Shown in pieces: positions 34,558-38,072 of a stretch of DNA of 52,539 bases. Source of the DNA: Octopus bimaculoides (Eukaryota); NCBI RefSeq assembly GCF_001194135.2, contig NC_068986.1:111260279-111312817 (forward strand), read 5' to 3'. The notes under the pieces are model-generated. The model saw only the letters and a list, made by a program, of their open reading frames with translations, was not told the DNA's origin and did no database searches. The stretch's first letter is position 1. Each line of letters starts with the position of its first letter. Both the position numbers and the translations under genes were made by a program.

Positions 34558-36175
34558 GCGCGTATGTCTGTGTGTGCACATATATCTTACAAACACAAAA
34601 TTGAACGATTGTAGCTGGTACAACAGCTGACTACACAAGCGTTACACTTGGTGCCAATAAATTATCATTTTTATGCTACACTGTCCACTTTATGTTCTGC
34701 ATATCTGCCACTCACCGTTTGAAGCTTGCTAACATCCTACACTCGGATCTCTATATCGTATTCATGCATATATTGAAGACATAATAATCTGTATCTGAAA
34801 TTTTAAGATTCAAGTCCCCATCATACTGTCGGAACAACATGTGTAAACACTCCAATACATAATTTCCTTTAGGAAACCTTTCTGAAGACCATTCCAGTTA
34901 TTTCGGTAAACCATATTTTGCTTTGACTTTCTGGAAATGATAGAAACAAAACCAGACTTAAGCAAAATTTACGCGTCAGGCTTACCAACCTACTTTCAAC
35001 TGTGTAAAATTTCGAATAAGATAGTGAAAATCTTAGGCTTCAATCGTGTGGTATTCGTACATTCACTTCTAAAAATGAATATATACGAAGTAGAGGCAAA
35101 TAGATATGTAGGCGGAATCCTGAGATAATCATGAAGACACTATTTTAAAAAATATGTGGAAAGCGTAAATGAAACAAAGGGCTTGAAGTGTAGAGTGGTT
35201 AGGAGCAGAACACAACATCTGCCTCAGTTTACATGCGGATAAGGTGTAGTGCACACGAACGAAGATACGATGAATTATTAATCGTACGAAGAAAATGTTA
35301 GAAAACAAGTACATTATACATACATATAGACAAACAGTCAGACAGACATATATACGAGATTGTAGTTTTACCTATATACATAGTACGTATGTATTGCGTG
35401 TATCTTTGAGTATGTTTATGTATGTATGTTTGTGTAAGTATGTATTTAAAACATTGCTTACAGTATACGCTATCTTCATATTTTTCGTTGTGGAAATTTT
35501 TGTTAAATCAATTACTCCTTTTCTATAATTTCACTCCGATTGTAACATTTTTATTGTTAAATATTTTCAATGATTTGATGAAATTTTAATTTCATTGCTA
35601 GCAATACATGTTTGGATTTATTTCTGTAATTTGATTTACACGTGAAATGCCCAGATATATAATTCGGACTACTTCGATGCTTGTTATATATCATCGCCGG
35701 ACACGGCATAACCTTTATGAATAAAATAATAAATTCATTTTTGGCGCACCCAATGCTTTCCATCGAAGAATATTCAAATCCAATTTTAACCACAAAAATG
35801 GATTCTCTTGGGGGAAAATATATGTGTTAGAATTCAAATAAATAAAGTATGAGGACACACTCGTTATCGGATAAAAATATAATCTTCAACAGTAAATCGA
35901 TGTTAGTCTTTTTCTTCAACACCAACACATACATTTACGCAGTACACAGTTATAGATACATGAACATGCACACACTGAAACACACGTACATGTACTGGTA
36001 CTCACATACATATGCACCTGCGAGGCACACGTACACTAACGCATGCATACACGAAATAAAATAAAATATGAAGATGCGTTTCTAGAGCACGAAGTAATAT
36101 AAATATATATATATATAAGCACAGGCAAATATATATCATTGTTATATCGCACGTTCGGATTACCTCTACTCAACT

Positions 36176-38043
36176 TCTATTTCTTTATTTGACACTACGG
36201 CCACAACACAGCGGTTACACTACAAGGACAAACAAAACACTACAATGGAGAGGAAGAACATAAAAAGAATGTGAATGAGATGTTATATAAAAATGAAGAA
36301 ATGAAATGGCTGCATGGGCCCCATTCCCATGCAGTACCATTTGAACGTTCAATTTTTACAATCGTTCAATTTTTGCATTGTTTTTTTTTTCTTAATCATC
36401 TTTTGTTTCTTCTTTTTTTTCCAGTGAAACACTTTTACTTTTTTTCCCTCTTTTTTGTTCCTTTTTTCCTTTGTTTTCCCTTTTTTATCAACAAAAGAAT
36501 TTTATTTACATTTTTTTTTCTTTTTAATACCTTATGAAATGCTCCAAGTCTTTTAGCTCAACTACTGGTGGCAGGTGTTCGAATTCCACCAACACTCCGG
36601 GCGGGTCTATCTTGTCTCCGCACATGTCTTTCAGTCTCTTGTATGTGTTTTTGTCGACCACAATGGCCTTCCCGTTTTCGGAATATATACCCGTGAATAA
36701 CCTCACTCTTATGATATGCTTGAATTTAAAAATTTTTCTTTCCGTTTCTTTGTTTCTTGCATATGTTACGAAATTCCATTTATTTTTTCCTCTTCTTGGT
36801 TTTCTCTTTTCTTCTTCCACTTCTGCTACTTTTTTCCTTTTCAACTCTGAACAATCTCTCCATTTCCCCCTCGTACAGTTGCACTCCTGATTCTTTTTCC
36901 TTCGCTGGGACAACCGGCGTCTTTAACACTGTTTCCTCCTTCTGTAACTCCTTCTCGGACACTTTTCCTATTACTTTTTCACTTTTTTTCTCCATCACCC
37001 TTTTATCTTCCTTCCTTTTGGTCGCAGCTTTCATTTCCACCTCTTCTTTCTTCTTTTTCTGGCTCTCTGGCGGCGGGCTCGCTCTTCCAGTTCTACTTTT
37101 TCTTTCCACCACCGTGAATCCCTCCTCCGCTGTTTCTTCTTCCATCTCCACCTGTACTACCTGGTTCGCACTCTCACGCTTCTCCGTCTGTTATCTCTGT
37201 GGGCATCTCATCTTCATGTGGCCTTTCTCCCCACATGCAAAACATATACTTAGCCTGCCCTCCACTATCACTCTCAATCTCAAGTCGTCAGTCAGCACAC
37301 CTCTCCTCAACAATGCGATTTAAGTCTTCTATTGTTGCCTGGATAGTGAGCTCAATTCCGTATCCCCAGTAATTAATTCTTTGTGTCCTTGTGGCCTTCA
37401 ATATTTTGGCCTCATCCTCCATATTGAACATTATGACCTGCCATCAGCCATGTTTCTTTTAGTTCTGGGAGTACTTTGCCTACTCGTACTCTGGCCATAA
37501 GTTGGCCACAGTATGAAGGCAAAAGCACCCACTCCTCCGATCTTATTGCTTCCGTCAAGTGTTTAATTGCTTCTTCCTCTGTCGCAAAGCGCACCTCCAC
37601 GGTAGCATACTTCTTTCCTCTTGTTATAAATGTTGTTAGATTTTTTTAATGCTTTCTAAACATTCTTCAATTTCCTCCACTGTCGCAATCTCTATCTTTC
37701 TCGTTGCAATTTTCATTGTCTTGAATACAACTGTTCGTTTTGTTACATTGCTTGTCAGTTCCGCAGGCGGCGTTAACTTCAACGTATCTCCATCTTTCTC
37801 CAGCAACCTCTCATATTCCTTCATTTTCTTTGGTTCAACCTTAATTTCAATTATTTCCAACGTTTCCTCTCCTATTGCCTTTCCATTTGCGGCCGCATAA
37901 CTGTGGCCACCCACTGGCGTTTTCTCCATTTTTCCCCCAATGGGAAGAGAAAAAATAAAACAATTCCAACAGTAATAATTAACAAACAAATATTTCACGC
38001 TCTGACTTACGATAAAGACATTCCGTTATCAACAACTCAAACG
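36176..38043 (-). mobile_element. ORF1-only (half-L1-like) non-autonomous retroelement, 1868 bp, flanked by a 14-bp direct repeat (element E2)
   Basis: ACCTCTACTCAACT at 36162-36175 and 38044-38057; AATAAA plus an A-rich end next to the left repeat; a single disrupted ORF1-like frame; no EN/RT. Confidence 0.8.
36524..37929 (-). pseudogene. Disrupted L1/Tx1-like ORF1 (RRM-like region, CCHC zinc knuckle, charged linker, C-terminal block)
   Basis: MEKTPVGGHSYAAA...VEVRFATEEEA...LPSYCG...RVRVGKV.PEL...RVIVEGRLSICFACGEKGHMKMRC (knuckle 37203-37244)...KE-rich...WNFVTY...HFIRY*. About 4 frameshifts and 1 in-frame stop. Confidence 0.8.
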
Positions 38044-38072
38044 ACCTCTACTCAACTACTCCGACGTCTATA

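What the first reader, a model, noticed from the sequence alone, without database searches (positions are those of the whole stretch)
36162..38057. Complete TSD-flanked retroelement that encodes only an ORF1/Gag-like protein (half-L1-like)
Seen: a perfect 14-bp direct repeat ACCTCTACTCAACT (36162-36175 and 38044-38057) brackets 1868 bp. On the minus strand that span holds a short leader, one disrupted frame of roughly 460 codons (SYAAA motif, RRM-like block, CFACGEKGHMKMRC knuckle, K/E-rich linker, C-terminal block), a 3'UTR, and AATAAA with an A-rich end. There is no endonuclease or RT. Known: L1/Tx1 insertions make 7-20-bp TSDs, and ORF1-only HAL1 elements exist in some lineages. Inferred: this is a non-autonomous family mobilised in trans that keeps its own RNA-binding protein. 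I do not know of one described in cephalopods.
Basis: partly seen in the sequence, partly recalled or inferred. Interest (0 to 1): 0.85.

Follow-up and report, generated by a model that had tools for sequence, protein, structure and literature searches.

The report
Dead ORF1-only LINE derivative in octopus
This is a decayed copy of an octopus "half-LINE", a mobile element that kept only the RNA-binding first gene of a LINE retrotransposon and must borrow the copying enzyme from full-length relatives; the kind is known from mammals (HAL1) and flies (HeT-A), but I found no description of it in cephalopods.

Summary
A perfect 14-bp direct repeat (36162-36175 and 38044-38057) brackets 1868 bp. On the minus strand this span carries a leader, one broken ORF of about 470 codons (four frameshifts, one internal stop), a 348-nt 3'UTR, and AATAAAGAAA at the end.

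The ORF belongs to a large family found only in octopods: 421 HMMER hits, traced to Octopus bimaculoides, O. sinensis, O. vulgaris and Argonauta hians. The predicted fold is two RRM-like domains, a CCHC knuckle, a long helix, and a compact C-terminal domain with no known match.

In three relatives the same ORF1 is followed by an ORF2 with an APE-type endonuclease (Pfam in one, similarity in two); RT and zf-RVT have Pfam calls in one. In six other copies of the window's subfamily it is followed only by a short 3'UTR. dN/dS among these ORF1-only copies is 0.2-0.3. ORF1-only and autonomous members share a small 3' hairpin with compensatory changes.

So the half-L1-like reading is right in substance. 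The caveat is the 14-mer. It is probably a real target-site duplication, since relatives have different 15-19-bp ones. But it resembles a motif found at both ends of related copies and at head-to-tail junctions, so the target is not random. This copy is dead. New member of a known kind.

The parts
38044..38057 (-). 5' copy of the 14-bp flanking direct repeat (AGTTGAGTAGAGGT in element orientation); probable target-site duplication
   Evidence: Exact repeat with only two occurrences in the window. It aligns with the motif CGTTGAGCAGCAGT that begins the leader of related copies.
36176..38043 (-). Body of the ORF1-only retroelement copy (1868 bp)
   Evidence: 74-79% DNA identity over up to nearly its full length (best: 1569 aligned nt, element nt 4-1543, to L001) to copies in O. 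bimaculoides and O. sinensis. There is no second copy in the window.
37930..38043 (-). 5' leader (114 nt), G/T-rich with TTGAG repeats. It lacks about 10 nt (a T-run plus GGAA) that full-length relatives have.
   Evidence: MAFFT alignment of the 5' ends of six copies.
36524..37929 (-). ORF1 pseudogene, about 470 codons including the stop codon. Frameshifts lie near 37640, 37438, 37308 and 36787, with an in-frame stop at 37191-37193.
   Evidence: Three-frame translation and exact mapping of the stitched pieces. The closest protein hits are 52-79% identical (P0001, P0002, P0009).
37514..37740 (-). RRM-like domain 1 (residues about 64-141 of the stitched protein)
   Evidence: AlphaFold2 model with beta-alpha-beta-beta-alpha-beta topology and pLDDT 80-93. 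Foldseek hits to tandem-RRM proteins NONO/SFPQ, hnRNP A1 UP1 and TDP-43, E 4e-5 to 5e-3.
37257..37507 (-). RRM-like domain 2 (residues about 144-232)
   Evidence: Same model and Foldseek hits.
37203..37244 (-). CCHC zinc knuckle, CFACGEKGHMKMRC
   Evidence: Pfam zf-CCHC at 17.1 bits in this decayed copy, below the 20.8 cut-off. Above the cut-off in family members P0015 and P0010. C237, G241 and C250 are conserved in at least 90% of 16 members (C240 is invariant); H245 is not among the conserved columns.
36788..37190 (-). K/E-rich linker with a long predicted helix (residues 296-336)
   Evidence: Model. Selection is relaxed here, with dN/dS about 0.6.
36527..36787 (-). Conserved C-terminal domain (residues 391-477), alpha/beta, with no known relative
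   Evidence: pLDDT 91-97 in the full-length model. dN/dS 0.10-0.23 in all but one pair. Also present in the ORF1 of autonomous LINEs, P0020 and P0044. Foldseek against PDB gives nothing better than E 0.03.
36176..36523 (-). 3'UTR (348 nt)
   Evidence: It is alignable with the 3'UTRs of other copies.
36190..36203 (-). Conserved 3'-terminal hairpin TGGC-CGTAGT-GTCA
   Evidence: Present at the same place in 10 elements, 3 of them autonomous LINEs. 92.5% of cells are paired, 3 of 4 pairs have changes on both sides, and the covariation score exceeds all 500 shuffles. The alignment was put in register by hand.
36176..36189 (-). AATAAA signal and short A-rich terminus (AATAAAGAAATAGA)
   Evidence: Conserved as AATAAAGA(G)AAA in all subfamilies examined.
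36162..36175 (-). 3' copy of the 14-bp flanking direct repeat
38073..38326 (.). Assembly gap (254 N), 15 bp beyond the 5' repeat. Not part of the element, but it limits what can be said about the upstream flank.

Best explanation
The span is one dead insertion of a non-autonomous, ORF1-only derivative of an APE-type LINE with a type I ORF1. Its architecture is L1/Tx1-like and it is specific to octopods.

Shown:
- The element consists only of a leader, one ORF, a short 3'UTR and a conserved 3' terminus.
- The ORF is homologous along its whole length to the ORF1 of autonomous LINEs in O. sinensis, O. bimaculoides and Argonauta hians.
- Other copies of the subfamily have the same ORF1-only layout and the same 3' end.
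- The ORF evolved under purifying selection while the ORF1-only copies diverged.
- ORF1-only and autonomous members share a small hairpin with compensatory changes just upstream of AAUAAAGAAA.

Inferred mechanism:
1. A master copy is transcribed from its leader.
2. Its protein (two RRM-like domains, CCHC knuckle, helix, C-terminal domain) coats its own RNA.
3. The endonuclease/RT of a related autonomous LINE recognises the shared 3' hairpin and tail and copies the RNA into the genome by target-primed reverse transcription.
4. Nicks staggered by 14-19 bp create the flanking duplication.

The target is not random. Insertions of this subfamily favour GTTGAG-AG--GT-like sites, and often land exactly at the 5' edge of a resident copy, where the original nick site is regenerated. 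This builds head-to-tail arrays. The window copy has since acquired four frameshifts and a stop codon and is inert.
For: Family and host range:
- 421 proteins at E<=1e-3 and 124 at E<=1e-10.
- Every member traced is from Octopus or Argonauta.

ORF1 linked to ORF2 in relatives:
- L005: ORF1 at 7947-9809, then Exo_endo_phos, RVT_1 and zf-RVT.
- L009 (Argonauta): intact 527-aa ORF1 plus ORF2.
- L010 (O. bimaculoides): ORF1 plus ORF2.
- The RT piece matches R2 and L1 ORF2p structures.

ORF1-only layout:
- Seen in the window, L001, L002c1, L002c2, L003A/B and L004.
- Also in the distant subfamily copy L007.

Dispersal and truncation:
- Flanks of different copies are unrelated.
- L004 and L003A begin near element nt 540-600.

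Selection:
- dN/dS is 0.20-0.29 overall in 9 of 10 pairs (0.54 for the tandem neighbours L002c1/c2).
- It is 0.15-0.27 in the RRM/knuckle part and 0.10-0.23 in the C-terminal domain in all but that same pair (0.43 and 0.41), and 0.34-0.72 in the linker in 8 of 10 pairs.

Fold: tandem RRM-like.

3' hairpin: covariation shown.

Flanking repeats in relatives:
- L009: a perfect 15-mer.
- L010: a perfect 19-mer.
- L007: 14 of 15 positions.
- All three differ in sequence from the window's repeat.

Arrays:
- L002 holds c1-c2-c3 and then an element with an endonuclease domain. L003 holds A-B. In L010 a LINE abuts another family member.
- Tandem neighbours are not each other's closest relatives, which argues against simple local duplication.
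Against: - No intact ORF of this subfamily was recovered. Every DNA copy examined has at least one frameshift, stop or deletion.
- The partner LINE was not identified. UTR alignments with L005 are not significant beyond the terminal motif.
- The window 14-mer resembles the motif at both ends of related copies. It could therefore be element sequence rather than duplicated target.
- Only two independent complete ends of this subfamily could be compared.
- The upstream flank is cut off by an assembly gap.
- The hairpin has only 4 bp and was aligned by hand.
- The NJ tree has no support values.
- Clade assignment (L1/Tx1) rests on domain architecture, not on a phylogeny.
Confidence: 0.8

Rival explanations
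1. The 14-mer is not a target-site duplication but a terminal redundancy of the element. The element's first 13-20 nt would be repeated after its 3' end. This could arise in two ways: masters sit in head-to-tail arrays and transcripts end, 15-25 nt after AAUAAA, inside the next unit; or the window copy is the remnant of such an array. The element would still be an ORF1-only LINE derivative, but its true boundaries and TSD would lie elsewhere or be absent.
For: - The sequence after the conserved 3' end is CGTTGAGCAGCAGT or a close variant in L002c1, L002c2 and L003A. This is also the start of the following copy's leader, and it matches the window 14-mer at 10 of 14 positions. Background frequency for such a match is 2e-4.
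- L004's 3' flank is weakly similar for about 30 nt.
- L007's 3' repeat plus flank resembles the 5' start of another family element in L010.
- The distance from AATAAA to the end of the 3' 14-mer (about 22 nt) fits a polyadenylation cleavage site (general knowledge).
Against: - The two window copies agree with each other at all 14 positions while differing from the L002/L003 motif at 4. This is what a fresh duplication gives.
- No poly(A) follows the 3' 14-mer.
- L009 and L010 have perfect flanking repeats that include sequence clearly outside any element.
- L001 has no such motif at its 5' end.
- Target-primed reverse transcription starts at the RNA 3' end, so a 14-nt piece of a second unit downstream is hard to produce.
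Confidence: 0.17
2. It is a retrocopy or member of a host gene family (a lineage-specific RRM-CCHC protein, possibly domesticated from a LINE) rather than a mobile element family of its own.
For: - Many members are annotated as ordinary genes, as 'CCHC-type domain-containing protein' or 'uncharacterized protein LOC...'.
- There is purifying selection.
- Some copies lie in tandem clusters.
Against: - There are hundreds of mostly fragmentary, frameshifted copies.
- UTRs and termini are conserved between dispersed copies while the flanks are unrelated.
- Some copies are 5'-truncated.
- The same ORF is directly linked to endonuclease/RT in relatives.
- The 3' hairpin is shared with autonomous LINEs.
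- Long 'genes' containing the domain are chimeric models with WD40, LDLa or astacin parts.
Confidence: 0.03
3. Each ORF1-only copy is an independent internal-deletion product of a full-length LINE, not a family that propagates as ORF1-only.
For: Internal deletions do occur in the family. L003A jumps from the leader to about nt 600, and P0001 lacks the first RRM.
Against: - All copies of the subfamily in which that region is present share the same junction between ORF1 stop, 3'UTR and 3' end, in two species and at 73-93% mutual identity.
- No ORF2 remnant is detectable.
Confidence: 0.02

Closest known systems
HAL1 (half-L1) of mammals
   Same: A non-autonomous LINE derivative that keeps only ORF1, is multi-copy, and is presumed to use ORF2p from autonomous relatives. 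HAL1 arose several times independently (PMC5753468).
   Different: HAL1 derives from mammalian L1 with a type II ORF1p (coiled coil, RRM, CTD; Pfam Transposase_22). This ORF1 is type I-like (two RRM-like domains plus a CCHC knuckle) with an extra C-terminal domain, and no Transposase_22 match. The host is an octopod. The end is a short AATAAAGAAA terminus with a hairpin rather than a long poly(A). The ORF1-only lineages look old and diversified (weak evidence).
HeT-A of Drosophila telomeres (from my own knowledge, not tested here)
   Same: A non-LTR element that encodes only a Gag/ORF1-like protein with zinc knuckles and no RT. It depends on RT supplied in trans and forms head-to-tail arrays mixed with autonomous relatives.
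   Different: HeT-A arrays are at chromosome ends and are made by end-priming, without TSDs. The arrays here are internal (for example at 51 Mb of a 95-Mb chromosome), and solo copies have flanking repeats. No sequence relationship was tested.
L1/Tx1-group LINEs with type I ORF1p
   Same: The autonomous relatives (L005, L009, L010) have ORF1 with RRM plus CCHC, and ORF2 with an APE-type endonuclease; RT and zf-RVT have Pfam calls in L005 only. Type I ORF1p is described for plant L1 and animal Tx1-like elements (PMC5203782). L1-Tx1 families are reported in octopus genomes (PMC13282606 and PMC8967140). Some Tx1-group elements are target-specific (own knowledge), which echoes L005 lying between (ATT)n tracts.
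   Different: The window element has no ORF2. No phylogenetic placement of the RT was made. Pfam does not recognise the RRMs or the C-terminal domain.
SINE/LINE pairs that share a 3' end ('stringent' recognition)
   Same: Non-autonomous and autonomous elements share a conserved 3'-terminal stem-loop next to the tail.
   Different: The non-autonomous partner here is 1.9 kb and protein-coding. The hairpin is only 3-4 bp. Recognition by the RT is untested.

Membership tests
Non-LTR (LINE-type) retroelement insertion made by target-primed reverse transcription | Flanking target-site duplication | tested here: inconclusive
   The window has a perfect 14-bp repeat. Relatives have 15-19-bp repeats of different sequence. 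However, the window repeat resembles a motif at the ends of related copies, and no empty site was available.
Non-LTR (LINE-type) retroelement insertion made by target-primed reverse transcription | Common 3' end with a variable, often truncated 5' end among copies | tested here: met
   The 3' end is conserved to the base in 5 copies. L004 and L003A begin near nt 540-600, and L006 is also 5'-truncated.
Non-LTR (LINE-type) retroelement insertion made by target-primed reverse transcription | No LTRs or terminal inverted repeats; A-rich or poly(A) 3' terminus | tested here: met
   No long terminal repeats in 36162-38057. The terminus is AATAAAGAAATAGA. The related copy L002c3 ends in A14+.
ORF1-only non-autonomous LINE derivative (HAL1-like, in the functional sense) | Its single ORF is homologous to the ORF1 of autonomous LINEs | tested here: met
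   The N-terminal domains, knuckle and C-terminal domain align with the ORF1 of L005 (P0020) and L009 (P0044), and the N-terminal domains with that of L010 (P0053), each followed by an endonuclease-bearing ORF2 (RT by Pfam in L005 only).
ORF1-only non-autonomous LINE derivative (HAL1-like, in the functional sense) | Copies never contain ORF2; the same ORF1-3'UTR junction is seen in independent copies | tested here: met
   Six further copies in two species. The ORF1 stop lies 226-348 nt before the shared 3' end. There is no ORF2 similarity in the window. The sample is small.
ORF1-only non-autonomous LINE derivative (HAL1-like, in the functional sense) | The family propagated as ORF1-only with its coding capacity maintained | tested here: met
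   dN/dS is 0.20-0.29 in 9 of 10 pairs of ORF1-only copies with dS 0.27-1.0 (the tenth, L002c1/c2: 0.54 at dS 0.17). It is lowest in the folded domains.
ORF1-only non-autonomous LINE derivative (HAL1-like, in the functional sense) | Mobilised in trans by the ORF2 protein of an autonomous partner | not testable with these tools
   Only indirect support: a 3' hairpin and tail shared with autonomous members. The partner was not identified.
HAL1 in the strict sense (derivative of mammalian L1) | ORF1 of the Transposase_22 / type II kind, related to mammalian L1 | tested here: not met
   Pfam finds only a weak zf-CCHC match and no Transposase_22. The fold is tandem RRM plus knuckle.
Type I ORF1p (RRM plus CCHC) | At least one RRM fold | tested here: met
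   Predicted structure with pLDDT mostly 80-93 in this part. The top Foldseek hits are tandem-RRM proteins, probability 0.97-1.0. This is a prediction only; Pfam RRM models do not hit.
Type I ORF1p (RRM plus CCHC) | CX2CX4HX4C zinc knuckle | tested here: met
   The motif CFACGEKGHMKMRC is present. Pfam zf-CCHC passes its cut-off in P0015 and P0010 and is just below it in the window copy. The cysteines are conserved.
L1/Tx1 clade of LINEs (for the autonomous relatives) | APE endonuclease, RT and C-terminal zinc-binding domain in ORF2, plus RT phylogeny | tested here: inconclusive
   The domain architecture fits. The RT piece matches R2 and L1 ORF2p about equally. No tree was made.
LTR retrotransposon / retroviral Gag | LTRs, protease/integrase neighbours, capsid domains | tested here: not met
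   None in the window element. Relatives carry an APE-type endonuclease (LINE-type RT shown by Pfam in L005 only), not Pol.
Penelope-like element (considered because of the partial tandem arrangements) | GIY-YIG endonuclease, PLE-type RT, hammerhead ribozyme in the pseudo-LTR | tested here: not met
   No Rfam match at E<=1 in 35500-38100. Relatives have APE endonuclease.

The most novel reading that the evidence does not exclude
ORF1-only 'half-LINEs' in octopods may not be short-lived deletion products. They may be old, diversified lineages: at least two deep clades with 25-40% protein identity, kept under purifying selection. They may also home to their own kind. Each subfamily would carry or select a short subfamily-specific end sequence, so that new copies land at the 5' edge of resident copies and build mixed head-to-tail arrays with autonomous LINEs. 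This would be a self-targeting integration mode guided by the element's terminal sequence.
Probability: 0.15. Interest if true: 0.7.

Novelty: new member of a known kind. Interest (0 to 1): 0.45.

Why it matters
It shows that the half-LINE strategy, keeping the RNA-binding ORF1 and borrowing the endonuclease/RT, has also arisen in cephalopods. Here it arose from a LINE with a quite different ORF1 (tandem RRM plus zinc knuckle plus a novel C-terminal domain), and the ORF1 stayed under selection.

Practical consequences:
- The family accounts for hundreds of 'CCHC-type domain-containing' and 'uncharacterized' gene models in octopus annotations. Some of these are chimeras with real genes. They should be masked as repeats.

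Open questions it raises for LINE biology:
- What an ORF1 protein contributes in cis that makes it worth keeping.
- How a 3' hairpin might couple a non-autonomous RNA to a partner RT.
- Why insertions cluster head to tail.

Tried and rejected
- The repeat finder on the whole window returned only microsatellites and N runs.
- The first protein search with the full stitched protein was swamped by the K/E-rich linker and gave one hit. The third, with a 72-sequence alignment, was also swamped and added nothing.
- P0001 and most UniProt-only members have no DNA on record, so close solo copies of the window's subfamily could not be fetched.
- I looked for shared UTR sequence between the window family and the L005 LINE by local alignment. 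It was not better than shuffles. Only the terminal motif and hairpin are shared.
- TSD searches found nothing convincing for L008, L004 (whose 5' side is a satellite) or L011 (whose 3' end is missing).
- The C-terminal domain modelled alone gave only generic ferredoxin-like matches, E>=0.03.
- The endonuclease piece gave no PDB sequence hit.
- LTR/Gag, Penelope-like, processed host pseudogene and simple local tandem duplication were all considered and rejected. For the last, tandem neighbours are not each other's closest relatives.
- A fixed multicopy RNA-gene target (snRNA, tRNA, rRNA) was considered. There is no Rfam or tRNA hit at the site, and the flanks of different copies are unrelated.
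Full report
**Observation**

The 14-mer ACCTCTACTCAACT occurs exactly twice in the 52.5-kb window, at 36162-36175 and 38044-38057, even when one mismatch is allowed. No shuffle reached two hits. The 1868 bp between the copies, read on the minus strand, contain:
- a 114-nt G/T-rich leader;
- an ATG at 37929;
- a reading frame that has to be stitched from six pieces;
- a stop at 36524-36526;
- a 348-nt 3'UTR ending in ...TGGCCGTAGTGTCAAATAAAGAAATAGA.

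The frame is broken by frameshifts near 37640, 37438, 37308 and 36787, and by an in-frame stop at 37191-37193 just after the knuckle. Two details need correcting. There is no real poly(A) tail. And an assembly gap (38073-38326) starts 15 bp outside the 5' repeat, so the upstream flank is unreadable. The window contains no second copy.

**The protein and its family**

Pfam sees only a sub-threshold zf-CCHC match in the decayed copy. Database searches show a large family.
- The word-indexed search found nine proteins, eight of them named as Octopus.
- The exhaustive HMMER search found 421 proteins at E<=1e-3 and 124 at E<=1e-10.
- Every member whose source I traced comes from O. bimaculoides, O. 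sinensis, O. vulgaris or Argonauta hians.
- Long hits are chimeric gene models (WD40, LDL-receptor, astacin) that have swallowed a fragment. None contains RT or endonuclease.

An alignment of 16 members at 21-60% identity to the window protein shows a constant architecture:
- an N-terminal SYA-type motif;
- two modules with the signature RGxxYGTVEVxFxxEExA;
- EGRxPxCFxCGxxGHxKxxCP;
- a K/E-rich linker;
- a conserved C-terminal block that ends the protein.

An AlphaFold2 model built on a 93-sequence alignment has mean pLDDT 75.7. It shows two beta-alpha-beta-beta-alpha-beta domains, the knuckle, a 40-residue helix, and a compact C-terminal domain with pLDDT above 90. Foldseek against the PDB puts tandem-RRM proteins first: NONO/SFPQ, hnRNP A1 UP1, TDP-43 and Prp24, at E 4e-5 to 8e-3. 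The C-terminal domain modelled alone has no convincing structural relative. RRM plus CCHC is the architecture called type I ORF1p, described for plant L1 and animal Tx1-like LINEs (PMC5203782).

**Link to autonomous LINEs**

Three relatives carry the same ORF1 directly upstream of an ORF2.
- L005 (O. sinensis): ORF1 at 7947-9809, followed by pieces with Exo_endo_phos, RVT_1 and zf-RVT. The RT piece matches R2 and L1 ORF2p structures.
- L009 (Argonauta hians): an intact 527-aa ORF1 followed by an ORF2 that is 51-61% identical to that of L005.
- L010 (O. bimaculoides): the same layout.

So the protein is a LINE ORF1. L1-Tx1 LINEs are already reported in octopus genomes (PMC13282606 and PMC8967140). 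Those papers do not mention ORF1 or ORF1-only derivatives.

**The ORF1-only subfamily**

DNA of four loci encoding the closest proteins was fetched. These loci contain six further copies, 74-79% identical to the window copy and 73-93% identical to each other (85-93% among the O. bimaculoides copies).

In every copy where the region is present, the ORF1 stop is followed by 226-348 nt of alignable 3'UTR and then the same terminus...TGGCC(G/A)T(A/G)(G/C)TGCC(A/T)AATAA(A/T)GAAA. There is never an ORF2. Flanks of different copies are unrelated apart from common SINEs. Two copies begin near element nt 540-600.

A distant subfamily copy in O. vulgaris (L007, about 25% protein identity) has the same ORF1-only layout and the same kind of terminus.

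Nei-Gojobori estimates between ORF1-only copies give:
- dN/dS of 0.20-0.29 overall in 9 of 10 pairs (0.54 for L002c1/c2), at dS 0.17-1.0;
- 0.15-0.27 in the RRM and knuckle part in all but that pair (0.43);
- 0.10-0.23 in the C-terminal domain in all but that pair (0.41);
- 0.34-0.72 in the linker in 8 of 10 pairs.

The protein was therefore under purifying selection while these ORF1-only lineages diverged. None of the DNA copies I could read is intact.

A rough NJ tree without support values places the three autonomous ORF1s apart from two clades of copies without ORF2. This hints that ORF1-only lineages are old. I treat it as a lead only.

**A shared 3' hairpin**

Immediately 5' of AATAAAGA, all ten elements examined (seven without ORF2, three autonomous) can form a 3-4-bp hairpin with a C-T-GT-type loop:
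- TGGC-CGTAGT-GCCA in the window's subfamily;
- AGGC-CTTGT-GCCT in L007;
- GCC-CTTGT-GGC in L005 and L009;
- ATC-CTTAGT-GAT in L010.

On a hand-registered alignment, 92.5% of cells pair and three of four pairs have changes on both sides. The covariation score is 0.544 against 0.165 for shuffles (0 of 500 reach it), and slid controls pair at no more than 55%. The helix is tiny and the register is my own, so this is suggestive. It is what one expects if the partner RT recognises the 3' end, as in stringent LINE/SINE pairs. Beyond this terminal module the UTRs of the window family and L005 are not significantly similar, so L005 is not the direct partner.

**Is the 14-mer a target-site duplication?**

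Evidence for:
- L009 is flanked by a perfect 15-mer, CTTCAACTTATGTTT.
- L010 is flanked by a perfect 19-mer, TTTTTCAAACAGCTGGTCG.
- L007 is flanked by TGCTGGGTTCG(T/G)CTA.
- Each starts right after the A-rich terminus and ends just before the leader. The superfamily therefore makes 14-19-bp flanking repeats of differing sequence.

Evidence that complicates this:
- In L002 and L003 the copies lie head to tail. The sequence between the 3' end of one copy and the leader of the next is CGTTGAGCAGCAGT (variants CGTTGAGCGGCAGT and CGTTGAATAGCAGT), followed by a T-run and GGAATTTGAG.
- The same motif precedes the first copy of the L002 array, next to unrelated DNA.
- The window 14-mer AGTTGAGTAGAGGT matches this motif at 10 of 14 positions in the same register at both ends. 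Only 2e-4 of background 14-mers do as well.
- Likewise, L007's 3' repeat plus flank resembles the 5' start of the element that follows the L010 LINE.

The flanking repeats are therefore subfamily-specific, not random.

My preferred reading has three parts. The repeats are true duplications. The endonuclease (or annealing of read-through RNA) prefers certain sequences. And because the nick site at the upstream edge of the duplication is regenerated by each insertion, new copies often land exactly at the 5' edge of a resident copy, which produces head-to-tail arrays with one repeat per junction. Tandem neighbours are not each other's closest relatives, which argues against simple local duplication.

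The alternative, at about 17%, is a terminal redundancy inherited through transcripts of arrayed masters. I could not exclude it. Only two independent complete ends of this subfamily were available, and no empty site was.

**Other checks**

No Rfam family matches in or around the element, and the window has no tRNA genes. This argues against a ribozyme-bearing Penelope-like element and against an RNA-gene target.

**Comparison with known elements**

Functionally this is a half-LINE, like mammalian HAL1, which encodes only ORF1p and arose several times (PMC5753468). It is not HAL1 in the strict sense, because the ORF1 is of a different type and lineage. From my own knowledge, Drosophila HeT-A is the other close analogue: Gag-only, dependent on RT supplied in trans, and arranged in head-to-tail arrays. 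HeT-A, however, is telomeric and makes no TSDs.

**Verdict**

What has been shown:
- the ORF1-only architecture;
- multi-copy status;
- homology to LINE ORF1;
- coding constraint;
- a 3' module shared with autonomous LINEs.

What remains inferred or unresolved:
- mobilisation in trans;
- the identity of the partner;
- the exact nature of the flanking 14-mer.

The copy in the window is a dead pseudogene. I rate it a new member of a known kind, of moderate interest.

Noticed in passing
L005:7720-13390 (O. sinensis CM016872.1): The autonomous relative (ORF1 + APE/RT/zf-RVT) lies between (ATT)n tracts on both sides, and its 3' end runs into (ATT)n. It may be a microsatellite-targeting LINE, as known for some Tx1-group elements.
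   Followed up: partly
L002:5329-12669 (O. bimaculoides CM046610.1): A head-to-tail array: two ORF1-only copies of the window's subfamily, then a third of a divergent subfamily (41% identity) ending in poly(A), then an element with an ORF1 N-terminal stretch running straight into an endonuclease domain.
   Followed up: partly
L010:5764-12675 (O. bimaculoides CM046605.1): A LINE with a perfect 19-bp flanking repeat is inserted into the first few nucleotides of another family member that starts immediately downstream.
   Followed up: partly
L009:7791-13259 (Argonauta hians BAAFZT010000045.1): An intact 527-aa ORF1 followed by an ORF2-homologous region (tblastn, not checked for intactness), flanked by a perfect 15-bp repeat. 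This looks like a young, possibly active element, and it shows the superfamily extends beyond Octopus to argonauts.
   Followed up: partly
Proteins P0023, P0095, P0151 (the one traced, P0023, is an O. bimaculoides gene model): Gene models that fuse a fragment of this ORF1 to WD40, LDL-receptor class A or astacin domains. These are probably annotation chimeras from intronic insertions, or possibly exonisation.
   Followed up: no
L002:5329-5375 and 7116-7160; L003:5739-5780: The full-length leader starts GTTGAGCAGCAGTTTTTTTGGAATTTGAGTTGTCGATGACG. The GCAGTT resembles an initiator, and GACG lies about 29 nt downstream, where a DPE would sit, as in insect LINE internal promoters. This rests on my own knowledge and was not tested.
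   Followed up: no
window:37299-37312 (minus strand): Inside the ORF there is a near copy of the 14-mer (TGTTGAGGAGAGGT, 2 mismatches). It is probably chance.
   Followed up: no
window:21932-22622 (minus strand), next to the gap at 21035-21516: Two open frames of about 110 aa read like the C-terminal and N-terminal parts of a mariner/Tc1-type transposase (motif ...YSPDLA...FHVFPKMK...). Pfam gave no hit at E<=0.01, so this is unconfirmed.
   Followed up: partly
window: about 34430-34480, and flanks in L001, L004, L005 and L006: Short pieces of a repeat shared at 72-94% identity between loci flanks (82-85% for the window pieces). It looks like a SINE (sequence visible at L006:9100-9500).
   Followed up: no
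window: gaps at 4224-4368, 16274-16594, 21035-21516, 32411-32717, 38073-38326, 40788-40845 and 45166-45175: Seven N gaps, at least four of them (those whose edges were seen) bordered by microsatellites. This is a short-read scaffold, so local structure next to the gaps, including the element's upstream flank, is uncertain.
   Followed up: no
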